Shown here piece after piece: positions 8,897 through 63,345 of a stretch of 64,000 nucleotides of DNA (its first letter is position 1; each line of letters opens with the position of its first letter). Location of the stretch: NCBI RefSeq assembly GCF_006345805.1, contig NC_043002.1:97030001-97094000 (forward strand), in the 5' to 3' direction. A model generated the notes under the pieces. The model worked only from the letters and a program-made list of their open reading frames with translations, had not been told where the DNA came from and made no database searches. Made by a program: the position numbers and the translations under genes. This DNA comes from Octopus sinensis (taxonomy: Eukaryota).

Positions 8897-9061
8897 AATT
8901 TATTGTATCGACCCCGAAGGGATGAAAAGCAAAGTAGACCTCGGTGAAATTTCAACTCAGTCCGTAAAGAGGGATTAAATGCTGCTAAGTATTTTTCCCA
9001 GCATGCTAACGATTCTGCCAGCTCGTCGCCTTATATATAGGTGTATATATATATATATATA

Positions 9062-10658
9062 TCGGGAGTGGCCATGGGAACGCGAATGGCCCCCAACTAT
9101 TCGAACCTGTTCGTTGGCTATGTTGAGGCGCAAATATCTAGTTTCACTGATCCCACTCCCGAACTATACGGTCGTTACATTGACGACATTATCGGTGCCA
9201 CCTCACTCTCCCGCGAACATCTAGACTCCTTCCTCTCTTTCGTTCAATCCTTCCATCCTGCCCTCCACTTCACCTGCACTATCTCCAACACTTCTGTCTC
9301 CTTCCTCGACATTTCGGTCACCATTCATCACTCTACTCTTACCACCTCCATTCACTACAAACACACAGACTCACACCCATACCTAAACTTCTCTTCCTCC
9401 TACCCCAAACACACCAAGTTTTCCATCCCTTTTTCCCAATTCCTCTGTCTACGTAGGCTCTGTAGTGACGACCATGACTTTGAGACTCAGTCTCAACGCA
9501 TGGCTCGCCACTTCATCATACGTGGATACCCCCTCACCACTATCCACACCTCCCTTGCCAGAGCACGTTCCGTAGACCGTGCATCTGCTCTCTCCCCCGA
9601 ACCCGCCCTAAAGTCTCCCGCCTCCCTTTTCACCTCACTTACCACCCTACCGCACCATTCTTCGAGCTTTCCGGCTTCTCCAGTCCGACCCGTCCACTTC
9701 AAACCTCTTCCCTAACCGACCCCTACTCTCCTTCAAACGAGCCCATAACCTACGAGACCTCTTGATCCACAGCTTCTTCCCTGACCCTACCTCCCAGCCT
9801 GGCTCGTTCCCCTGCTCCCGCTCACGTTGCCGCACTTGCCCTCACCTCTCCAACACCACCCTCCTCACCGGCACCCATCACCGACCCTATCGCATCATCG
9901 ACTCCTTCACCTGCGCCTCCAGCAATATCATCTTTTGCATCTCCTGCTCTCTCTGCTATTCCCTGTACATCGGACAAACGGGACGCCGCTTGGCTGACCG
10001 GTTCGCGGAACACCTCCGAGACATCCGCCTCGCCAATGACACACCAGTATCACGCCATTTCCGCTCCACCGGTCACTCATTGCAACACCTGTCTGTGTTC
10101 GGATTGTCCTTGCACAGAAGCCATCCGGATTCCCGCTTGCGCTGTGAACAGGGATTAATCTTCTCTCTTCGCTCTTTTACGCCATTTGGGCTCAACTCCC
10201 CCCCCCTTTCATCTAACCTCCCCCGACTCCTACTTCTCTTCATTCCTTCATCTTTTCACCCCTACTCTCTTTCCCTCCTCTTCCCTTCTTTCCCATCTTC
10301 CCCTTCTTCCCTCTTCTTTCTTCTTTCTTCTTCCCTCTTCCCCTTCTCTCTTTCTCTCTGCTCCCTCACTCCCCTTCTCTCCCCCTCCCCTCCTCCTCTC
10401 CCTACCACTCCCCTCCTTTCTCATCGTCTGACCTCTGACCTCTGACTTCTGCCTGAAGTCAGAACGCCATGATAGACCGTTAGCTCCTACACGCATTTTT
10501 TCCTTCCTTGTTTCTTTTCTGTGTATCTTTCTGTCGAAGAGCGTAGGCTCGAAACGTAAAAGACTTGTTCTATTTCTATTCCTGAGCGCCATACTAATAC
10601 ATTTGTTTTTTTGTACTCCACCTGCCTTCTCTTTTATTTATTTTCGTAAACCTTCCCG

Positions 10659-10660
<2 letters not shown>
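9062..10660 (+). mobile_element. Penelope-like element, 5'-truncated (RT C-half, GIY-YIG endonuclease, pseudo-LTR), frameshifted
   Basis: GVAMGTRMAPNYSNLFVG and RYIDD (RT); SNIIFCISC..LYIGQTGRRLADRFAEH (GIY-YIG). (TA)n at both ends. Confidence 0.92.
10526..10563 (+). ncRNA. minimal type I hammerhead in PLE pseudo-LTR, A6 mutated to U
   Basis: TCTTT-CTGTCGA-A-GAGC GTAG GCTC-GAAA-CG-TA/AAAGA. Confidence 0.6.
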
Positions 10661-10693
<33 letters not shown>

Positions 10694-15570: not shown

Positions 15571-17073
15571 TATGTTTTACTTATTTGAATATACATTTAT
15601 TCTTAAGAATAAATTTGGTCCATGTTGTGTGTGATGAAATTCACGAGTGAATGACTAATATGGGTAACCATATTTCAGAAATATGGTTACCCATTTTACC
15701 TCTACATAAGAGAAAATTGGAAGCGATACCTGGACGACTGCTTTATCATCTGGAAGGAGAACATCGACAAACTTTTGGATTTCAAAACAACACTAAATGA
15801 CATAAATAGTAACATTCAATTCAAAATGGAATATAATAAAGAACAACTTCCATTTTTAGACATCATGATAAAAAAAGTTAACAATGAAATTATAACTGAC
15901 TTTTATTATAAACAATATCTTCAAAACAATATCTTCTTTTTAATTCATGCCACCCGAAACACATAATAAACATCCCTTTCAACTTAGGAAAAGGGATCTG
16001 CACAATAGTGTCTGATAGAACAACTCGGGACCTTCGTCTTCAAGACCTCAAAACAACACTTATTGAAAGACAATATCCACACTCTCTTATCGACGAGGGA
16101 ATTAAACGTGCTAAACAATTAGGCACAAAAATACTAAGAAAAAAATAAACATAGCACCACACCTCAAACCAAAACATTACTATTTATATCAACACACAAC
16201 CCCAGAAACAGTGAGGCATTCAACACTATTGTGCAAACTTTTCCTTTACTAACTAGATATCCAAAAATGAACTACATCCTGAAAACACACAAACTCATCA
16301 AATGCAAAAAAAACAAGACAAATCGCTAATGAGACTACTAACAAATGCGAAGCTTTACAAAACAACCACGAAACCAGCAGTTGAAAAATGTGGACGCCCA
16401 AACTGTAGAACCTGCCCCAACCTACTTGAAGGCTCGGATTTCCTTTTCAAACAAGGACAGAGGTTCACAATTAAAACTAGTTTCACTTGTACCTCTGAGA
16501 ACCTAATTTATGTAATAACCTGCTTGAGTTGCGGACACCACTATATTGGACAAACGAGTATGACCTTGAGAAAGAGAACATAAGGAGCAAATCCGTTTCC
16601 CGCAATACAGACAAATTCCTCTCACTGAACATGTAGAAAAATGTGCAGGTAACATCAAACCAAATTTCACAATCTTCCATTTCTACCAAGTGCAAAGACG
16701 CAATCTCTCAACTAGAACGTTTGAATAAAGAAACTTTTTTCATTGAAAAATACAAAACACGTCTTAATATGCACTCATAAACAGCGTTTATCTTTTTACA
16801 TATTTCAATTCACGATTACATAACTGTACATAAATCCCCTACTAAACAAGGTTTTTAAAACTTGTCTCTGTCTGAACACATAAATAATCTCCACCCATTA
16901 CCGAAAGCTGAAAAGTTATCTCCCTTACCCACAACAATAACAACACTAACGACAACCAATTACCTCCCTTTATTTATCTACTTGTAAAGTCATTCACTCG
17001 TGAATTTCATCACACACAACATGGACCAAATTTCTTCTTAAGAAAAAATATATATTCAAATAAGTAAAGAATA

Positions 17074-29810: not shown

Positions 29811-30040
29811 AGGCGGTGATCTGGAAGAAACGATAGCACGCCGTGCGAAATGCGTAGCCGTATTTCGTCTGCCGTTACTTTCTGAGTTCAATTTCCGCCG
29901 AGGTCGATTTTGCCTTTCATCATTTCGGGGGTCGATAAATTAAGTACCAGTTACGCACTGGGGTCGATGTAATCGACTTAATCCGCTTGTCTGTCCTTGT
30001 TTGTCCCCTCTATGTTTAGCCCTTTGTAGGTAATAAAGAA
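29811..30040 (+). mobile_element. SINE family A
   Basis: Head, B box GAGTTCAATTTCC and body. Confidence 0.85.
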
Positions 30041-42295: not shown

Positions 42296-42780
42296 CTGGA
42301 ATGTCCGCGATGCCTGGAATGTCAGGGATGTCTGAAATGTCGGGAATATCTGGAATGCCAGGAGTGTCAGGAATGTCTGGAATGTCTGGAATGTCAGGAA
42401 TGCCTGGATGTCTGGCATGTCTGGAATGTCAGGAATGTTTGCAATGTCTGGAATATCTGGAATGTCACGAATGTCTGGAATGCCTGGAATGTCAGGAATG
42501 TCTGGACTGTCAGGAATATCTGGAATGTCAGACATTCCTGACATTTCAGACATTCCAGACATTCCAGACCGCGTGAGTACCGTTTGCGATTTTTTCCTCC
42601 GTCTTCTCTTCTTTGGATCTTTCCTTTTCCTATGTTTCTGACGAAGAGCTCCGCTCGAAACGTTAAACTCTCCTTCTTTCCTTCCTTCCTGATGTCCACT
42701 AATACTATATTTGTTCCACGTCCTCGCGTTGTTATGTTTCCTCTTTGTGTTTGCTTGTTTGGATTAAATTTATATATGTA
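42296..42780 (+). mobile_element. composite: 9-bp GACATTCCW minisatellite (inverted then direct) plus PLE pseudo-LTR, copy 1
   Basis: Array orientation flips at 42530/42531; the pseudo-LTR begins cgcgtg at 42570. Confidence 0.75.
42634..42668 (+). ncRNA. minimal type I hammerhead (C3-G8, extra A after A9, GUU triplet)
   Basis: GTTT-CTGACGA-A-GAGC TCC GCTC-GAAA-CG-TT/AAAC. Confidence 0.65.
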
Positions 42781-42862
42781 TATATATGTGTGTGTGTGTT
42801 TCTGTGTGTATGTGTGTGTGTATATATATATATGTATATGTATGTATATATATATATAGATA

Positions 42863-42905
<43 letters not shown>

Positions 42906-43117
42906 GAAATATTAAAATAACTAAGTCTCTCTAAAAGAGAACAGCGGCAGCGTTCCCGGAAAATAATAGTTATCGCCATACTAATATGGCATTCTTATAA
43001 AAATAAGAAAAAAGCTGTCCGCTTATTAGCTCCATGAGGCCATCGCCTTAAGTTAGCTATTTGATACACAAACTGTATCCATATAACCTTCGAACAAGGG
43101 AGGTCAGTCGCTCCACA

Positions 43118-43188
43118 CTACTTGACCGGCAGCTACAGACGCGTTTCGGAGTATTGCCCCTTTTCAATGCAGCGTAGCCAGCCAGTAG
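43118..43188 (-). ncRNA. type I hammerhead ribozyme, U3-A8 core (copy A, intact)
   Basis: Reverse complement reads GCTGCA-TTGAAAA-GGGG CAATA CTCC-GAAA-CGCG-TC/TGTAGC, with an extended helix I. Confidence 0.85.
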
Positions 43189-43491
43189 GTGTCGCTTCCG
43201 ACAATCTCTGTTCGATGGTTTTATTTACCTAGTTTCGGTGGAATACATCCACTTGTTTTCAATAATAGAAATATTAAAACTCATGGAGCTAATAAGCGGA
43301 CAGCTTTTTTCTTATTTTTATAAGAATGCCATATTAGTATGGCGATAACTATTATTTTCCGGGAACGCTGCCGCTGTTCTCTTTTAGAGAGACTTAGTTA
43401 TTTTAATATTTCTATTATTGAAAACAAGTGGATGTATTCCACCGAAACTAGGTAAATAACACCATCGAACAGAGATTGTCGGAAGCGACAC

Positions 43492-43561
43492 CTACTGGCT
43501 GGCTACGCTGCATTGAAAAGGGGCAATACTCCGAACGCGTCTGTAGCTGCCGGTCAAGTAG
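43492..43561 (+). ncRNA. type I hammerhead, copy B, GAAA reduced to GAA (probably inactive)
   Basis: Same as copies A and C except ccGAACGCG at 43531-43539, lacking one conserved A. Confidence 0.75.
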
Positions 43562-43852
43562 TGTGGAGCGACTGACCTCCCTTGTTCGAAGGTTATATGG
43601 ATACAGTTTGTGTATCAAATAGCTAACTTAAGGCGATGGCCTCATGGAGCTAATAAGCGGACAGCTATTTTCTTATTTTTATAAGAATGCCATATTAGTA
43701 TGGCGATAACTATTATTTTCCGGGAACGCTGCCGCTGTTCTCTTTTAGAGAGACTTAGTTATTTTAATATTTCTATTATTGAAAACAAGTGGATGTATTC
43801 CACCGAAACTAGGTAAATAAAACCATCGAACAGAGATTGTCGGAAGCGACAC

Positions 43853-43923
43853 CTACTGGCTGGCTACGCTGCATTGAAAAGGGGCAATACTCCGAAACGC
43901 GTCTGTAGCTGCCGGTCAAGTAG
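43853..43923 (+). ncRNA. type I hammerhead ribozyme, U3-A8 core (copy C, intact); predicted cleavage after GUC at 43903
   Basis: Helix I GCUGCA/UGUAGC, core UUGAAAA, helix II GGGG/CUCC, GAAA, palindromic helix III ACGCGU, GUC triplet. Confidence 0.85.
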
Positions 43924-44097
43924 TGTGGAGCGACTGACCTCCCTTGTTCGAAGGTTATATGGATACAGTTTGTGTATCAAATAGCTAACTTAAGGCGATG
44001 GCCTCATGGAGCTAATAAGCGGACAGCTTTTTTCTTATTTTTATAAGAATGCCATATTAGTATGGCGATAACTATTATTTTATATATATATATATAC

Positions 44098-44404
44098 ACA
44101 CTTAAACAAGCACACAAAACGCACACATAATATACACGTAGGGTTTGGCAAAATTGGGTATACCGATGCTGTCTAAAACATTCACTCACAGTTCCCAGAA
44201 ATCGCAAAACAGGCTTCTCCCCCGTGTACACTCACACACAAACGCATATACGCGCGCGCACATACGCAAAAATGCACACAGACATACACATGCACAAACG
44301 AACGCACACATACGCACGCACACGCACACACACGCGCACTCATGCACACACGCACGCACACACATACACACACACGTGCACACGCACACACACACACACA
44401 TACA
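44098..44404 (+). repeat. dispersed repeat X (about 130 bp) plus CA-rich tail, copy 1
   Basis: cttaaacaagcac...cccagaaatcgcaaaacagg matches the reverse complement of 56520-56650. Confidence 0.75.
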
Positions 44405-46123: not shown

Positions 46124-47659
46124 AACTATTCGCAATATCTATATGCATATATAAATACCTAACGATCAGATTATTGTAGTGGTTACTCCAGCTGTCTTCG
46201 TTTGATGTAATACCACCGATTAAACTCTTAATGCAGGGATGCCACTGGCTAACAAGGCACAACGATGTAGAAACAACGGGGATCCGAAGACAATTTCAGT
46301 AATGAATGAAATGGCTACAAAAATACATTCGTCGTGCAGAAGACGTTGTTCTCTACCAAAACACTACAGCGATTAGCGTATTCAAGTTCGAATCTACCGG
46401 AACGTATGCAAGTTATCGTTCGATTTTTTGCTATTCACCGTGCATATGATAACTTATTAATAATATATTTACTGCACCAATATATTGCAGCAGATTTTCA
46501 AAGTAATGCCTTTCCTGCACCTGCATTATTTCATGAGAATTTCTGATTTTCATTGTTACCATTGTTATCATTATATGATATTGTTTATAAAGACCCAGAA
46601 AGTTAACAAACAAAATATTATGAATAAAACTAATTTAAATTCTTGATCGAATGAGGGAGGCTCTATCCCTCTCATTAAATCAAATTTAATGCTTATTCTT
46701 ATATGTCATCATGTGTTACGAAACAAATCAAAGTTAAACAAAACCAGTTCTATATCCCTGGTTCCTTGAATATGCCTATCTAAGTTTGGTACAAAGCCAT
46801 CAATTTTACGAGAGGGGTAAGTCGATTACAACGGCCCCATTGCTCAGCTGCTACATATTGTATCGACCCCAGGGGGATAAACAACAAAGTTGACCATGGC
46901 AGAGTTTGAACTTAGAAAGTAAAGAGCCGAAAAAATATCGCGCAGGACACATCACATTGAAATCATCGGTTCTCATCCGCTGACCGAAGTTAAACAATGT
47001 TGAGTCTAGTTATTTAGATGAGTGAATATTTAGGAAACCTAAATACTTTAAGCAAAACCACTACTTTTCGGTTCCTTAAATAATACATCCAAGTTTGTTC
47101 AATAAAAGATTTGGAGCATTCAAGTAATGTTTGAGCCCCAATATGTGAAAGGGTATGTCTCCTTTACCAATGACGAGTAAAGGAATTACAAACTCGATAC
47201 AATAACCGGCAAGTTTGATAGTAATTTGTGCTAAATATTTTACCATAGACAAACTAGCATAACAATGAAATGCGCAAACAAGTTAATTATAATTTCATCT
47301 GAGTGAGGTGGTTAATCGAGAGTCCTTTCAATATTACAATGATGCGTTTCCATTTTATGAGAATCAGTTATAGAAATAAGGATATGCAGCGGAAAGAACC
47401 TCTTTTCAGTACATAGAAAAGGACAGTCTTTAATCCCACCATTTGAACATCAGCCTCTTAGCCCGTAGTGTAGCCCTAGTTCCAAAAACCCATTTCCATT
47501 ACAGATGCAGATGACGCCTTAAAAGTTGAGCAACTCCTTCAAAACAGGTAGCAATTGAAATCAGTCCTTGCTTATGAGCGTTCTCTAATGACCACAAGTT
47601 GGCAAAAGTGACCGATCTCATTAATTTTCACACGCTTATATTTCTTTCACCCGGAAGTG

Positions 47660-50519: not shown

Positions 50520-51838
50520 TCCGGGGAGAGACGCTCTCTCCACTCCTTTTCTGCCTGGCACTGAGACCTTTATCTGATATCCTAAACAGTAGTGGATGTG
50601 GATACAATTGTTACGGCAAAGCAGTCAGCCATCTCTTATATATAGATAATATAAAACAGTATACTACAAATGATATACAACCGGAAACATTATTACAGGC
50701 AGTACATAGATTTACGAAAGAAATAAACATGAAATTTAGCTTAGAAAAATGTGCCAAAGCAACCTTGAAAAGAGGAAAATCGTTAAGAGTATCAATATCA
50801 TACTAGACAGAGCAAATGAAATAAGAGAATTAGACCAAATAGTTAGGCATCAATGAACTGGATACGATGCAACACACACAAATGAAAGAGAAGATAAAAA
50901 AGAATACTATCGACGAGTTACATTAATATTGAAAACAGAGCTCAATGCGAAAAACAAGCTAATAGGTATCAATATTCTAGCCGTCCTACTTATAAATTAC
51001 AGGTACAATATTATTAACTGGACCCTAAATGAATTAATCAAAATACACAGGAAAACAAGAAAGATAATGACAGGATTTAGGATGCGCCACCCAAACTCTG
51101 ACATAGAAAGGCGATATATACAACATTTGGAAGTTGGTAGAGACCTTATAAAGTTAGAAAGCTATTGCAAAATAACCGCCATAGGACTACAGAAAAACCT
51201 ACTTCAGAAGCAAAGTAAACTAATACAAATATCCACAAAACATGAACAAAACAAAAAACTTTCAGCCTTTAAGGAAGTGAACAAATACAAAAAAGAAAAC
51301 GAAGAAACAACAAAGGGTTTAAAATAACTGAAATTCAAATTGGAACAGCAACGGATCATGATAAAACGATGGCAAGGAAAGCCCCTTCATTGTAAAAAAT
51401 GGGTTAAACTAACCAGAAAAGAAATAGACAAAGCAAAATCCCAGCTATGGTTGAGAAGTTCAGGACTCAAAGCAGGGACTGAAGGATTTTTAATTGTAGC
51501 ACAAGATAAAAGCCTTCCTACCAGACATTACCAAAAATATGTGATGAAAAGAAATACAAGTAACTGAAGGAAACGTGGAGATGGAAAAGAAGAAGCAATA
51601 AATCACATTGTCTCTGGCTGCCCAGTCCTAGCTAAGAAGGAATATATTCACAGACACGACAGAGTTGACACCTGTATACACTGGAAGCTATGCCAACACT
51701 ATGGAATAACAACAGAAAAAAGATGGTATATGCACACACCAGAAAAGGTCGCAGAAAAGGAAAAAATAACCATACTCTAGGATATGCTAATATACACAAA
51801 GATAGAGAAATCAACACCAATAGTTCGGATATAGTTGC
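50520..51838 (+). mobile_element. R4/Dong-like LINE fragment (RT and C-terminus), degenerate
   Basis: GIFRGDALSPLLFCLAL, SHLLYID, TEGFLIVAQD, EAINHIVSGCPVLAKKEYIHRHD. Confidence 0.85.
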
Positions 51839-53219: not shown

Positions 53220-53801
53220 TCTTTTCTACTCTAGGCATAAGGCTTGAAATTTTGGGGCAGGGGCCAGTCGGTTAGATCGACACCAGTAAGCATCTGGTTC
53301 ATAATTTATCGAGACCAAAAGGATGAAAAGCAAAGTTGTCCTCGGCGGAATTTGAACTCAGAACGTAGCGGTAAACGAAATACCTATTTCTGTACTACCC
53401 ACAAGGGGCTAAACACAGAGGGGACGAACAAGGACAGACAAACGGATTAAGTCGATTACATCGACCTCAGTGCGTAACTGGTACTTAATTTCTCGACCCC
53501 GAAGGGATGAAAGGCAAAGTCGACCTCGGCGGAATTTGAACTCAGAATGTAGCGGCAGACGAAATACCTTTTTTTTTACTACTCACATAGGGGTAAACGT
53601 AGAGAGGACAAACAAAGACAGACAAACGGATTAAGTCGATTATATCGACCCCAGTGCGTACCTGGTACTTAATTTATCGACCCCGAAAAGATGAAAGGCA
53701 AAGTCGACCTCGGCAGAATTTGAACTCAGAACGTAACGGCAGACGAAATACGGCTACGCATTTCGCCCGGCGTGCTATTGTTTCTGCCAGCTCGCCGCCT
53801 T
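53220..53801 (-). mobile_element. SINE family A multimer (three bodies)
   Basis: Same junction as 1509-2121. Confidence 0.85.
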
Positions 53802-55829: not shown

Positions 55830-56650
55830 TGTGTCTGTCTCTCTGTCTGTCTGTGTATGTGTGTGTTGGTGTATGTGTGTGCGTGTGTGCATGCGAGTGC
55901 GTGTGTGTGTGTGTGTGCGTGTGTGCGTATGTATGTGTGCGTATATGTGTGTGTGCATGTGTCTGTGCGTGTGTTTGTGTATTGCGTGTGTTTGTGATTG
56001 CGCGCGCGCACGCGTGTGTGTGTGCGCGTGTGCACGTGTGTGGTGTGTATGTGTGTGCGTGTGGTGCTGCGAGTGCGTGTGTGTGGGTGTGCGTGTGTGC
56101 GTATGTATGTGGGTGTGCGTGTGTGAATGTGTGTGTGCATGTGTGTCTGTGTATGTGCGCGTTTGTGATTGCGCGCGTGCGCAAGTGTGCGTGCGGGTGT
56201 GCACTTGTGTGTGTATGTGTGTGCGTGTGTGCGTGCGAGTGCGTGTGTGTGTGTGTGCGTGTGTGCGTATGTATGTGTGTGTGTGTGTGCGTGTGTGAAT
56301 GTGTGTGTGCATGTGTGTCTGTGTATGTGCGCGTTTGTGATTGCGCGCGTGCGCAAGTGTGTGTGCGGGTGTGCACTTGTGTGTGTATGTGTGTGCGCGT
56401 GTGTGTGTGCTTGTGTGCGTGTTTGTGTGCGCGTATGTGTGCGTTCGTTTGTGCGTGTGTATGTCTGTGTGCATTTTTGCGGGTGAGCGCGCGCGTATAT
56501 GCGTTTGTGTGTGTGTGTGTACACAGGGGAGAGGCCTGTTTTGCGATTTCTGGGAACTGTGAGTGAATGTTTTAGGCAGCATCTGTATACCCAATTTCGC
56601 CAAATCCCACGTGTATATTATGTATGTGTTTTATGTGCTTGTTTAAGTGT
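55830..56650 (-). repeat. dispersed repeat X plus expanded GT/CA-rich tail, copy 2
   Basis: Reverse complement of 44098-44404 with internal tail duplications. Confidence 0.75.
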
Positions 56651-56727
56651 ATATATACATACATATATATAGACACACACACAAACACAACACACACACA
56701 GACAAACACACACACACATATATATAT

Positions 56728-57810
56728 AAAGTTAATCCAAACATGAAAACACAAAGAGAAAACACAACAACGCGAGGACGTGGAACAAATATAGTATTAT
56801 TGGACGCTCAGGACGGAAGGAAAGAAGGAGGATTTAACGTTTCGAGCGGAGCTCTTCGTCAGAAACGTAGGAAAAGGAAAGATCAAAGAAGGGAAGACGG
56901 AGGAAAAAATCGCCATCGGTACACACGCGGCTGGAATGTCTGGAATGTCTGACATTCCACATATTCCAGAGAGTCCAGACATTCCTGACATTGCAGACAT
57001 TCTAGACATTCCTGACATTCCAGAAATTCGAAACATTCCAGACATTCCGCACATGACATTCTTGACATTCTGTGTCGTGACGTGACATTCGATTCCATTC
57101 CTTGACGTGACGTGAGATTCCATTCCATTCCATGACGTGACGTGACATTCCATTTAACGTCACGTCATGTAACGTCATTTAACGTCATTTAACGCCACGT
57201 CGTTTAACGTCCCCTCATATAACTTCATTTAACGTCCTTTAACGTCAAGTCATTTAACGTGACGTTATATGACGTTGCGTTAAATGACGTGAGATCAAGT
57301 GGTGTTAAATGTCGTTAAATGACGTGCCGTTAAACGACGTTAGGTGATGTTAAATGAAGGAGTATGACGTGACGATAAATGACGTTAATTGTCGTCAAAT
57401 GACATTCCAGACATTCCTGACATTCCAGATATTCCAGACATTCCAGACATACCTTACATTTCTGACATTCCAGTCATTCCAGGTACTCCGGACATTCCTG
57501 ACATTCCAGGTATTTTGGACATTCCAGACAATCCTGACATTCCTGACATTCCTGACATTCCAGACTTTCCAGACATTCCTGACTTTCCAGACATTCCTGA
57601 CATTCCAGACATTCCTCGCATTCCCGATTTTCCAGACATTCCAGGTGTTTTTGACATTCCTGACATTCCTGACATTCCAGACATTCCAGATATTCCTGAC
57701 ATTCCTGACATTCCAGATATTCCTGACATTCCTTGCATTCCAGACATTCCTGACGTTCCTGAAATACCTGACATTCTTGGCATTCCAGATATTCCTGACA
57801 TTCCAGACAT
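56728..57810 (-). mobile_element. composite: PLE pseudo-LTR plus 9-bp GACATTCCW minisatellite, copy 2
   Basis: 56728-56929 is the reverse complement of 42570-42780 with the same array junction; the array flips at 56950/56951. Confidence 0.75.
56832..56866 (-). ncRNA. minimal type I hammerhead (C3-G8), same core as 42634-42668
   Basis: Reverse complement reads GTTT-CTGACGA-A-GAGC TCC GCTC-GAAA-CG-TT/AAAT. Confidence 0.65.
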
Positions 57811-62764: not shown

Positions 62765-63345
62765 TTTTTCCTACTCTAAGCACAAGGCCCGAAATTTTGG
62801 GGGAGGGGGACAGTCGATTAGATCGACCCAAGTATGCAACTGCTACTTAAGTTATCAACCCCGAAAGGATGAAAGGCAAAGTCGAACTCGGCGGAATTTG
62901 AACCCACAACGTAATGACAGACGAAATACCTATTCTTTACCACCCACAAGGGGCTAAACACAGAGGGGACTAACAAGGACAGACAAACGGATTAAGTCGA
63001 TTACAACGACCCCAGTGCGTAACTGGTAATTAATTTCTCGACCCCGAAGGGATGAAAGGCAAAGTCGACCTCGGCGGAATTTGAACTCACAACGCAAAGG
63101 CAGACGAAATACCTATTTCTTTATTACCCACAAGGGGCTAAACATAGAGGGGACAAACAAGGACAGGCATAGGTATTAAGTCGATTACAATCGACCCCAG
63201 TGCGTAACTGGTACTTAATTTATCGACCTCGAAAGGATGAAAGGCAAAGTCGACCTCGGCGGAATTTGAACTCAGAACGTAACATCAGACGAAATACCGC
63301 TAAGCATTTCGCCCGGTGTGCTAACGTTTCTGCCGGCACGTCGCC
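62765..63345 (-). mobile_element. SINE family A multimer
   Basis: acgaaatacc recurs at 62921, 63104 and 63289 (about 184-bp unit). Confidence 0.85.

What the first reader, a model, noticed from the sequence alone, without database searches (positions are those of the whole stretch)
42901..44080. Candidate non-LTR retrozyme: young, ORF-less 362-bp tandem repeat with one full hammerhead per unit
Seen: a 362-bp unit repeated about 3.2 times, about 3 differences in 1180 bp, no ORF, embedded in (TA)n, each unit carrying a type I hammerhead. Established: non-LTR retrozymes are tandem arrays of a few hundred nt with one type I hammerhead per unit; they self-cleave to monomers, circularise, and are thought to be copied by Penelope-like RTs. 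Inference: this is a recently mobile cephalopod retrozyme yielding 362-nt linear and circular RNAs, mobilised by the PLEs abundant in this window. I do not recognise the family, but novelty needs a search.
Basis: partly seen in the sequence, partly recalled or inferred. Interest (0 to 1): 0.95.

Follow-up and report, generated by a model that had tools for sequence, protein, structure and literature searches.

The report
Hammerhead-bearing retrozyme-like insertion in (TA)n
A young 1.18-kb ORF-less insertion of a 362-bp unit (one inverted copy plus 2.2 direct copies) sits in a TA microsatellite and carries a variant hammerhead ribozyme motif, so it looks like a new member of the known animal 'non-LTR retrozyme' class, inserted in the manner typical of Penelope-like retroelements.

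Summary
The repeat is real, but it is not 3.2 direct copies. 42900-43279 is an antisense 1.05-unit copy, joined head-to-head at 43279|43280 to 2.2 direct copies (43280-44081). There are three variant sites, no ORF over 56 aa, and (TA)n on both sides.

No Rfam hammerhead model matches, even at E<=10 on 86 nt, and there is no CUGANGA box. A hammerhead-shaped motif is present nonetheless: helix I of 6 bp plus an internal loop, UUGAAAA, a 4-bp helix II, then GAAA-CGCG-UC^. Its core has U3/A8 in place of C3/G8, a covariation already published for Penelope-like element (PLE) hammerheads. My descriptor hit nothing in 300 window shuffles or 3000 unit shuffles.

One of the three copies has GAAA mutated to GAA. 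The 362-nt monomer folds far better than shuffles (z = -6.1).

A paralogous copy of the flanks (about 57068-56357, minus strand) is continuous through its microsatellite. The array is therefore an insertion.

Inverted 5' copy, partial tandem and (TA)n target together match the published PLE insertion signature. A 5'-truncated PLE flanked by (TA)n and two PLE tails with min-hammerheads lie in the same window.

Verdict: probable non-LTR retrozyme, a new member of a known kind. Cleavage, circles, dispersed copies and cephalopod origin remain untested.

The parts
42821..42899 (.). Left flank: (TA)n microsatellite, preceded by (TG)n, which is the target tract
   Evidence: TRF period 2 at 42821-42902; sequence. 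The left flank 42417-42852 aligns to the paralog 57068-56650 on the minus strand.
42900..43279 (-). Inverted arm: antisense copy of unit positions 122-362 plus 1-139 (380 nt, 1.05 unit). Its RNA-sense 3' end (...CTATTA) faces the left (TA)n.
   Evidence: blastn of the unit against the window; inverted repeats I1-I4; identical to the unit consensus.
43124..43183 (-). Hammerhead-like motif of the inverted arm (intact). C17 is at 43138, so the predicted cut lies between 43138 and 43137 on the minus strand.
   Evidence: Descriptor hit; sequence identical to the 43858-43917 motif.
43279..43280 (.). Head-to-head junction: antisense unit position 122 abuts sense unit position 1. It is not a symmetric palindrome centre and shows no microhomology.
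   Evidence: read from the sequence.
43280..43640 (+). Direct copy 1 (361 nt), with private C at 43460 and a 1-nt deletion in the GAAA box
43497..43555 (+). Hammerhead-like motif of copy 1, defective: GAAA is shortened to GAA (about 43533-43535)
   Evidence: not found by the descriptor.
43641..44002 (+). Direct copy 2 (362 nt), with private A at 43667
43858..43917 (+). Hammerhead-like motif of copy 2 (intact). Segments in order:
- helix I distal, GGCUGGC (43858-64) paired with GCCGGUC (43911-17)
- internal loop, UAC opposite U
- helix I proximal, GCUGCA (43868-73) paired with UGUAGC (43904-09)
- core UUGAAAA (43874-80)
- helix II, GGGG-CAAUA-CUCC (43881-93)
- GAAA (43894-97)
- palindromic CGCG (43898-901)
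- U16.1 and C17 (43902-03)
The predicted cut is after 43903.
   Evidence: Coordinates; descriptor hit; the MFE of the 85-nt segment is this three-way junction, z = -2.7; the dimer cofold forms an intermolecular ACGCGU helix III.
43542..43903 (+). Predicted 362-nt monomer RNA, cut site to cut site
   Evidence: MFE -123.9 kcal/mol against shuffles at -88.9 +/- 5.8, z = -6.1. Folded as a circle: -118.9 kcal/mol, 64% paired, 41% GC.
44003..44081 (+). Partial direct copy 3 (unit positions 1-79). Its 3' end (...CTATTATTTT) abuts the right (TA)n.
44082..44096 (.). Right flank (TA)n, followed by CA-rich sequence
   Evidence: 44081-44395 aligns to the paralog 56667-56357 on the minus strand.
56357..57068 (-). 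Paralogous 'empty site'. The same flanking sequence (84-88% identical) runs continuously through a TG/TA microsatellite (about 56650-56667) with no 362-bp array.
   Evidence: blastn; three-way alignment.
9062..10660 (+). Context: a 5'-truncated, frameshifted PLE (RT fragment, GIY-YIG endonuclease with a CX4CxxC linker, degenerate min-hammerhead at 10531-10558), bounded by (TA)n on both sides. It is a candidate relative of the autonomous partner.
   Evidence: ORFs; tblastn; 212 homologs carrying PF26215, PF00078 or PF01541; sequence.
42570..42760 (+). Context: a PLE-type 3' tail with a canonical-core min-hammerhead (42638-42664), ending at the same microsatellite that received the array
   Evidence: Descriptor hit; homology to 57068-56719 on the minus strand.

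Best explanation
The 1.18-kb block is a retrotransposed insertion of a small non-coding, hammerhead-bearing RNA element of the metazoan non-LTR retrozyme type.

Proposed cycle (steps 1-4 are inferred):
1. A master copy is transcribed as a multimer.
2. Neighbouring hammerheads have a helix III of only 1 bp capped by the palindrome CGCG, so they pair through ACGCGU and cut after GUC.
3. The 362-nt monomers are ligated into a highly base-paired circle.
4. A Penelope-like element's GIY-YIG endonuclease nicks a (TA)n tract, and its RT copies the circle or multimer by target-primed reverse transcription.

What this locus shows:
- Both strands of the target appear to have been used as primers. One cDNA of 2.2 units and one of 1.05 units lie in opposite orientations.
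- Each cDNA ends at an AU-rich CUAUUA site next to (TA)n.
- The two are joined head-to-head at 43279|43280.
- Both arms exceed one unit length, so the template was either circular or multimeric.

Shown here:
- The block is an insertion into (TA)n.
- The two-orientation, longer-than-unit architecture is present.
- The hammerhead-shaped motif is not a chance occurrence.
- The monomer fold is stable.
- (TA)n-associated PLE copies lie in the same window.

Inferred, not shown: self-cleavage, circularisation and PLE-mediated reverse transcription.
For: 1. Insertion. The flanks 42417-42852 and 44081-44395 are contiguous in a paralog at 57068-56357 on the minus strand, at 84-88% identity. The array copies are 99-100% identical, so the insert is much younger than its host repeat.

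2. Architecture. [quoted passage not shown]

3. Hammerhead motif.
- It has helix I of 6 bp, helix II of 4 bp, and helix III of 1 bp with a palindromic tetraloop. This is the architecture quoted for canonical metazoan type I hammerheads (PMC4209133; PMC7229834).
- The two core changes fall exactly on the pairing positions 3 and 8 (U3-A8). That covariation is already reported for about 1,300 PLE hammerheads in Schistosoma mansoni.
- The descriptor found 0 hits in 300 window shuffles and 0 of 3000 unit shuffles. In the real 64 kb the only other hits are two PLE min-hammerheads.

4. RNA fold. Monomer z = -6.1. The dimer cofold is -53.1 against 2 x -23.5 kcal/mol, with an intermolecular helix III.

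5. Class properties. 362 nt, 41% GC, no ORF, no LTR fit the published range of about 170-400 nt and below 50% GC.

6. PLE context. The window holds a 5'-truncated PLE bounded by (TA)n with the CX4CxxC linker proposed to target (TA)n, plus two PLE tails ending at microsatellites (linker hypothesis).
Against: - No Rfam hammerhead model reports the motif, even at E<=10 on 86 nt. The same models also miss the canonical-core PLE min-hammerhead at 42638, so this silence is weak evidence, but it remains a failed test.
- The core is non-canonical. The activity of a U3/A8 core in this context is unknown, and published PLE hammerheads cleave poorly in vitro.
- One of the three copies carries a deletion in the GAAA box.
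- There is only one locus, and no second copy in the 64 kb.
- No relatives turned up in metagenome, viral or prokaryote contig scans, or in the 5.8-billion-protein set. Family status, covariation in the helices and dispersal are therefore untested.
- My hammerhead descriptor was written after I had seen the motif.
- TRF did not report the period.
Confidence: 0.6

Rival explanations
1. Dead relic. The unit descends from a hammerhead-bearing repeat (a retrozyme or PLE terminal region), but its UUGAAAA core is inactive. The locus is then just a young inserted or duplicated minisatellite that makes no self-cleaved or circular RNA today.
For: The core is non-canonical and no Rfam model hits it. One copy already has a broken GAAA box. 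PLE-type hammerheads cleave weakly in vitro (PMC4209133).
Against: The two core changes are exactly the complementary pair 3/8, which random decay would rarely produce, and the same covariation recurs in about 1,300 natural PLE hammerheads. All three copies, including the independently oriented arm, share it, so the template RNA already had it. Helices I and II, G10.1-C11.1, the palindromic helix III and the very stable monomer fold are all intact.
Confidence: 0.15
2. The 362-bp unit is only the terminal (pseudo-LTR) part of a longer autonomous Penelope-like element. The locus would then be a heavily 5'-truncated PLE insertion rather than a separate non-autonomous element.
For: PLE insertions are typically 5'-truncated, partially tandem, accompanied by an inverted copy, and placed in (TA)n. 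A 2026 preprint derives vertebrate retrozymes from PLE pLTRs. PLE tails lie in the window.
Against: The unit repeats head-to-tail with an exact 362-bp period for 2.2 units, and the inverted arm also crosses the unit boundary. A multi-kb PLE template would give a multi-kb period. The unit shows no similarity to any PLE piece or tail in the window. Its hammerhead has the classical architecture (6-bp helix I with internal loop, no bulge before helix II), unlike the min-hammerheads of the window's PLE tails.
Confidence: 0.1
3. A DNA-level event or an artefact: a local duplication and inversion (replication fork-stalling, template switching or break repair) in an unstable microsatellite, or a long-read mis-assembly, with no RNA intermediate.
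For: (TA)n tracts are fragile. Large, 100% identical inverted arms of 320 nt are the sort of structure assemblers and repair processes can both create. A homopolymer-length difference (AAA versus AA) is a typical long-read error.
Against: Something 362 bp long still had to arrive at this site, because the paralog lacks it entirely. The junction is asymmetric (unit position 122 against unit position 1), not the symmetric palindrome made by fold-back reads or snap-back. No contiguous stretch of the present direct array reproduces the inverted arm without extra mutations, or else it lacks unit positions 80-139. The whole architecture matches a described retroelement signature.
Confidence: 0.1
4. 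A foldback or TIR-type DNA transposon, or a MITE, inserted at a TA target.
For: It has long inverted repeats and sits in TA dinucleotide repeats.
Against: The termini are not inverted repeats of each other. The left end is unit position 139 and the right end is unit position 79, so the complementary arms are offset by 60 bp. The interior is a direct tandem with a 362-bp period. No transposase is present.
Confidence: 0.03

Closest known systems
Metazoan non-LTR retrozymes (Cervera & de la Pena 2020, PMC7229834; examples include Mytilus galloprovincialis, Acropora millepora and the axolotl HHR_Amex1 repeats)
   Same: Short (about 170-400 bp) low-GC non-coding tandem units with one type I hammerhead per unit. 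Helix III is 1 bp capped by a palindromic tetraloop, as in the amphibian HHR_Amex1. The monomer is highly self-paired, and the elements co-occur with PLEs.
   Different: The core is U3/A8 instead of C3/G8, and Rfam models do not score the motif. There are only 2.2 direct units, plus an inverted 1.05-unit copy, which I did not find mentioned in those papers (no occurrence of 'inverted'). Copy number and circular RNA are unknown here.
PLE minimal hammerheads with U3-A8 covariation (Cercyon PLEs of Schistosoma mansoni; Cervera & de la Pena 2014, PMC4209133)
   Same: The same compensatory change in the catalytic core, the same palindromic 15.2-16.2 region, and the expectation that the ribozyme acts as a dimer.
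   Different: Those are min-hammerheads in the pLTRs of autonomous PLEs, with a short helix I, a long helix II and a bulged base before helix II. Here the architecture is the classical type (6-bp helix I with internal loop, 4-bp helix II) in an ORF-less 362-bp unit.
Complex insertion structure of Penelope-like elements (Naiad, Neptune and others; Craig et al. 2021, PMC8557442)
   Same: Partial tandem, an inverted 5'-truncated copy at the 5' side, and insertion into (TA)n so that no target-site duplication can be read.
   Different: The inserted sequence encodes no RT or endonuclease and has a 362-bp period. The 30-40-bp 'tail' extension described for PLEs was not identified.
Twin priming of LINE-1 (5' inversion). 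This comparison comes from my own knowledge and was not checked in a paper here.
   Same: Two cDNAs primed from the two strands of one target and joined head-to-head, giving an inverted 5' segment next to a direct 3' segment.
   Different: A different RT and endonuclease class would be involved, there is no poly(A), and both arms here are longer than one template unit.
Newt satellite 2 and Schistosoma Sm-alpha hammerhead repeats
   Same: Tandem or SINE-like repeats of about 330 bp carrying type I hammerheads with a weak helix III that work as dimers. From memory only, the 'UAC' internal loop in helix I and the CAA(A)UA loop 2 resemble the Schistosoma ribozyme.
   Different: There is no detectable sequence homology, the core is a variant, and the loop resemblance was recalled rather than tested.

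Membership tests
Metazoan non-LTR retrozyme | Head-to-tail tandem repeats of a unit of about 170-400 bp | tested here: met
   43280-44081 holds 2.2 direct units of 361/362 bp. A further 1.05 unit lies in inverted orientation.
Metazoan non-LTR retrozyme | A type I hammerhead ribozyme in each unit | tested here: inconclusive
   A hammerhead-shaped motif with a U3/A8 core occurs in every unit and is intact in 2 of 3. It is non-random. No Rfam hammerhead model matches, and catalysis is untested.
Metazoan non-LTR retrozyme | Non-coding, low GC (below 45-50%), no LTR | tested here: met
   Longest ORF 56 aa and longest stop-free run 55 aa; GC 41%. There are no terminal direct repeats beyond the unit itself. 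PBS and PPT were not specifically searched for.
Metazoan non-LTR retrozyme | Monomer RNA predicted to be stable and highly self-paired | tested here: met
   z = -6.1 on the plus strand and -4.3 on the minus strand. As a circle: -118.9 kcal/mol, 64% paired.
Metazoan non-LTR retrozyme | Many dispersed genomic copies (a repeat family) | not testable with these tools
   No second copy in the window. The source genome is not in any searchable collection, and the scans found nothing.
Metazoan non-LTR retrozyme | Expressed as self-cleaved linear and circular monomer RNA | not testable with these tools
   No transcriptome data are available here.
Metazoan non-LTR retrozyme | Co-occurrence with Penelope-like elements | tested here: met
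   PLE RT/GIY-YIG fragment at 9041-10445; a second fragment at 15712-16577; PLE-type tails with min-hammerheads at 42638 and 56862.
Canonical hammerhead ribozyme (Rfam Hammerhead_1 and related models) | Conserved core C3 U4 G5 A6 N7 G8 A9 ... G12 A13 A14 ... U16.1 H17 | tested here: not met
   The core reads U3 U4 G5 A6 A7 A8 A9. There is no CTGANGA on either strand and no Rfam hit. All other core positions are present (GAAA, U16.1, C17, G10.1-C11.1).
U3-A8 variant of PLE-associated hammerheads (Cervera & de la Pena 2014) | U3-A8 replacing C3-G8, an otherwise intact core, and a palindromic helix III region | tested here: met
   UUGAAAA ... GAAA-CGCG-UC; ACGCGU is a palindrome; literature description.
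PLE-type insertion | Partial tandem with an adjacent inverted 5'-truncated copy, plus a microsatellite (TA)n target | tested here: met
   compared with the description in PMC8557442.
Autonomous Penelope-like element or its pLTR | Contiguity with an RT plus GIY-YIG ORF, or sequence identity to a PLE terminus | tested here: not met
   There is no ORF in the array, and the unit shows no similarity to any PLE piece in the window. PLEs elsewhere in the genome could not be examined.
TIR or foldback DNA transposon | Terminal inverted repeats at the very ends of the element | tested here: not met
   The ends are unit position 139 (left, antisense) and unit position 79 (right, sense), so the complementary arms are offset by 60 bp.

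The most novel reading that the evidence does not exclude
The locus is a fossil of a single twin-primed, rolling-circle reverse-transcription event. A (TA)n-targeting Penelope-like element copied a circular 362-nt retrozyme RNA from both nicked strands of the target. If so, it gives insertion-site evidence for which machinery mobilises animal retrozymes. [quoted passage not shown] It would also show that a classical-architecture type I hammerhead can function with a U3-A8 core.
Probability: 0.35. Interest if true: 0.65.

Novelty: new member of a known kind. Interest (0 to 1): 0.5.

Why it matters
Animal non-LTR retrozymes are known, and their mobilisation by Penelope-like elements is suspected from co-occurrence and, recently, from pLTR phylogeny. 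The integration step itself has little direct evidence.

This locus offers three things. It has a clean paralogous empty site. Both of its arms are longer than one unit, which implies a circular or multimeric template. It also shows the inverted-copy plus tandem plus (TA)n signature described for PLE insertions.

If the same layout recurs at other insertions of the family, it would tie retrozymes mechanistically to PLE target-primed reverse transcription. It would also argue that multimeric arrays can arrive as multimers, rather than only growing locally by unequal crossover, as the 2026 preprint proposes.

The U3/A8 core in an otherwise classical type I hammerhead is a natural test of the C3-G8 tertiary pair. 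It also shows that standard Rfam screening misses such elements.

Tried and rejected
- Rfam at four levels of stringency gave no hammerhead or any other ribozyme. The miRNA 'hits' at 43223-43457 only reflect the large inverted repeat across the head-to-head junction.
- TRF gave no 362-bp period. The repeat was established with the repeat finder and blastn instead.
- Exact-pattern scans with hammerhead-region strings found nothing in metagenome contigs (two scans), viral contigs or prokaryote genomes.
- Exact look-ups of two array ORFs found nothing.
- A search with concatenated stop-free translations of the unit against 5.8 billion proteins found nothing. No relatives were obtained, so no covariation test was possible.
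- Pfam on the eight longest ORFs gave nothing useful, because they are mostly microsatellite translations. The PLE was recognised from its motifs and from the homology search.
- Organism identification failed. The closest PLE RT is 75% identical on an unnamed ENA metagenome scaffold.
- The TIR or foldback transposon reading was rejected because the termini are not inverted repeats.
- Simple snap-back or palindromic-read artefact was judged unlikely because the junction is asymmetric.
- One literature search was badly posed and returned only cephalopod biology papers. No held paper combines 'hammerhead ribozyme' and 'octopus' beyond the PLE paper.
Full report
**1. Observation.**
- blastn of one unit against the window and the repeat finder give four blocks:
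  - 42900-43279, the reverse complement of unit positions 122-362 followed by 1-139 (380 nt, 1.05 unit)
  - 43280-43640, a direct copy of 361 nt
  - 43641-44002, a direct copy of 362 nt
  - 44003-44081, a direct partial copy covering unit positions 1-79
- The antisense and sense parts meet head-to-head at 43279|43280.
- TRF did not list a 362-bp period.
- There are three variant sites in all: A at 43667, C at 43460, and a 1-nt deletion at about 43535. The inverted arm equals the consensus.
- No ORF exceeds 56 aa, and a consensus multimer has no stop-free run longer than 55 aa.
- (TA)n adjoins both ends.
- The unit occurs nowhere else in the 64 kb.

**2. It is an insertion.**
- The left flank 42417-42852 and the right flank 44081-44395 both have a paralog on the minus strand, at 57068-56650 (84% identity) and 56667-56357 (88%).
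- In that paralog the two flanks run into each other through a TG/TA microsatellite with nothing in between (alignment).
- The host sequence is an old duplicated repeat. It includes a 9-bp minisatellite and a PLE-type tail.
- The 1.18-kb block was added to the (TA)n tract of one copy, and it is much younger (99-100% identity between units) than the 12-16% divergence of the flanks.

**3. The hammerhead.**
- Rfam finds no hammerhead:
  - at gathering score
  - at E<=10 in 1.6 kb
  - at E<=1 in the window
  - at E<=10 in 86 nt
- Neither strand contains CTGANGA.
- Read directly, the sequence is 5'-GGCUGGC-UAC-GCUGCA-UUGAAAA-GGGG-CAAUA-CUCC-GAAA-CGCG-UC^UGUAGC-U-GCCGGUC (43858-43917). In hammerhead terms it has these parts:
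  - helix I of 6 bp next to the core, then an internal loop and 7 more pairs
  - a 4-bp helix II with G10.1-C11.1
  - the GAAA box
  - helix III of a single A-U pair capped by the palindromic tetraloop CGCG
- The only departures from the consensus core are U for C at position 3 and A for G at position 8. These are the two residues that pair with each other.
- Cervera & de la Pena 2014 describe exactly this covariation ('U3-A8 instead of C3-G8') in about 1,300 PLE hammerheads of Schistosoma mansoni. The same paper gives the 6-bp / 4-bp / 1-2-bp-plus-palindromic-loop architecture as the canonical metazoan type I form that acts as a dimer.
- I wrote a descriptor allowing either core, a 0-1 nt bulge, helix II of at least 3 bp, a palindromic insert of 0-6 nt, and helix I of at least 4 bp. 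Its results were:
  - four loci in the real window: the two intact array motifs, and two canonical-core PLE min-hammerheads at 42638 (+) and 56862 (-)
  - nothing in 300 dinucleotide shuffles of the window, and nothing in 3000 shuffled unit dimers
- The descriptor was written after I had seen the motif. A back-of-envelope estimate still gives a chance expectation of about 1e-3 or lower, even if the helices are taken as given.
- Rfam also misses the canonical-core min-hammerhead at 42638, so its silence is not strong evidence.
- The motif of copy 1 has GAA instead of GAAA and should be dead.

**4. RNA structure.**
- The 85 nt around the site fold into the hammerhead three-way junction as their MFE structure (z = -2.7).
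- Two copies of the motif cofold at -53.1 kcal/mol against 2 x -23.5, with an intermolecular ACGCGU/ACGCGU helix III. This is the double-hammerhead form.
- The monomer from cut site to cut site (43542-43903) folds at -123.9 kcal/mol against -88.9 +/- 5.8 for shuffles (z = -6.1). The complementary strand gives z = -4.3.
- As a circle, the monomer is 64% paired and 41% GC.

**5. Context.** The window does contain Penelope-like elements.
- 9041-9715 encodes RT motifs, and 9762-10445 encodes a GIY-YIG endonuclease preceded by a CX4CxxC motif. A frameshift separates the two.
- The RT piece has 212 homologs carrying PF26215, PF00078 or PF01541.
- This copy is 5'-truncated and bounded by (TA)n on both sides. 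Its tail holds a degenerate min-hammerhead at 10531-10558.
- A second, divergent PLE piece lies at 15712-16577.
- The two PLE-type tails with min-hammerheads (42638, 56862) each end at a microsatellite.
- Craig et al. [quoted passage not shown]
- Relative to the hammerhead-sense strand, the array has that same layout: an inverted copy on the 5' side, then a partial tandem, in (TA)n.

**6. Mechanism proposed.**
- The element is a non-autonomous retroelement of the retrozyme type.
- Shown here:
  - insertion into (TA)n
  - two arms in opposite orientation, each longer than one unit
  - RNA-sense 3' ends facing outward and stopping at CUAUUA-type AU-rich sites next to (TA)n
  - an asymmetric head-to-head junction
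  - a non-random hammerhead-shaped motif
  - a very stable monomer fold
- Inferred, in order:
  1. Transcription of a master multimer.
  2. Dimer-mode cleavage after GUC.
  3. Ligation to a 362-nt circle.
  4. Nicking of (TA)n by a PLE endonuclease.
  5. Target-primed reverse transcription from both strands (twin priming), running more than once around a circle or along a multimer.
  6. Joining of the two cDNAs.
- Because both arms cross the unit boundary, a linear monomer cannot have been the template.

**7. Rivals.**
- (a) An inactive relic: possible given the variant core, but the compensatory nature of the two changes argues for function.
- (b) A mere PLE pseudo-LTR: disfavoured by the exact 362-bp periodicity in both arms and by the lack of similarity to the PLE pieces here. 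It is not excluded genome-wide.
- (c) A DNA-level rearrangement or mis-assembly: disfavoured by the empty paralogous site, the asymmetric junction and the match to a described retroelement signature. It is untestable without reads.
- (d) A TIR or foldback transposon: rejected, because the termini are not inverted repeats.

**8. Comparison and novelty.**
- The class is known: metazoan non-LTR retrozymes have been described in a coral, a mussel and the axolotl.
- The U3-A8 core is known in PLE min-hammerheads, and the insertion architecture is known for PLEs.
- Three things appear new:
  - the family itself, since no relative could be found
  - the combination of a classical-architecture hammerhead with a U3/A8 core
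  - a retrozyme insertion carrying the PLE-type inverted copy next to a readable empty site
- The retrozyme papers I read do not mention inverted copies, and they say no motif points to the mobilising element.
- A 2026 preprint argues for a pLTR origin and for local amplification.
- I could not verify that the window is cephalopod.
- I rate the finding a new member of a known kind and of moderate interest. Everything beyond the DNA anatomy awaits a genome-wide copy survey and RNA experiments.

Noticed in passing
window 9041-10690: A 5'-truncated, frameshifted Penelope-like element. The RT fragment is at 9041-9715 and the GIY-YIG endonuclease with a CX4CxxC linker at 9762-10445. It is bounded by (TA)n on both sides (9045-9061 and 10661-10690). 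Its 3' tail carries a degenerate min-hammerhead, CUGUCGA-A-GAGCGUAGGCUC-GAAA-CG-UA, at 10531-10558 (A6 replaced by U).
   Followed up: partly
window 42296-42760 (+) and 56719-57810 (-): Two copies, about 85% identical, of a repeat made of a 9-bp minisatellite (CTGGAATGT)n followed by a PLE-type tail. The tail has a canonical-core minimal hammerhead (CUGACGA-A-GAGC-UCC-GCUC-GAAA-CG-UU; 42638-42664 and 56862-56836). Each copy ends at a TG/TA microsatellite. Rfam does not detect these hammerheads.
   Followed up: partly
window 15712-16577 (+): A second, divergent PLE-like fragment, 24-36% identical at the protein level to the RT and endonuclease pieces at 9041-10445.
   Followed up: no
window 46942-47054 (+): A 5S rRNA-like sequence scoring 45.6 bits against a gathering score of 38, with 36% GC and several broken pairs. 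It is probably a pseudogene or the head of a 5S-derived SINE.
   Followed up: no
window 46818-46932 and at least 9 other sites (e.g. 1559-1673, 29863-29980, 53448-53748, 62993-63282): A dispersed repeat of about 115 bp, about 74% identical between copies, lying just upstream of the 5S-like sequence. It is an unidentified interspersed element.
   Followed up: no
window 50929-51327 (+): A 132-aa ORF that by eye resembles the C-terminal region of a LINE-type ORF2. It was not tested.
   Followed up: no
window 43223-43457: The sub-threshold Rfam 'miRNA precursor' hits (MIR2606, MIR6217) only reflect the long hairpin formed across the head-to-head junction of the inverted and direct copies.
   Followed up: yes
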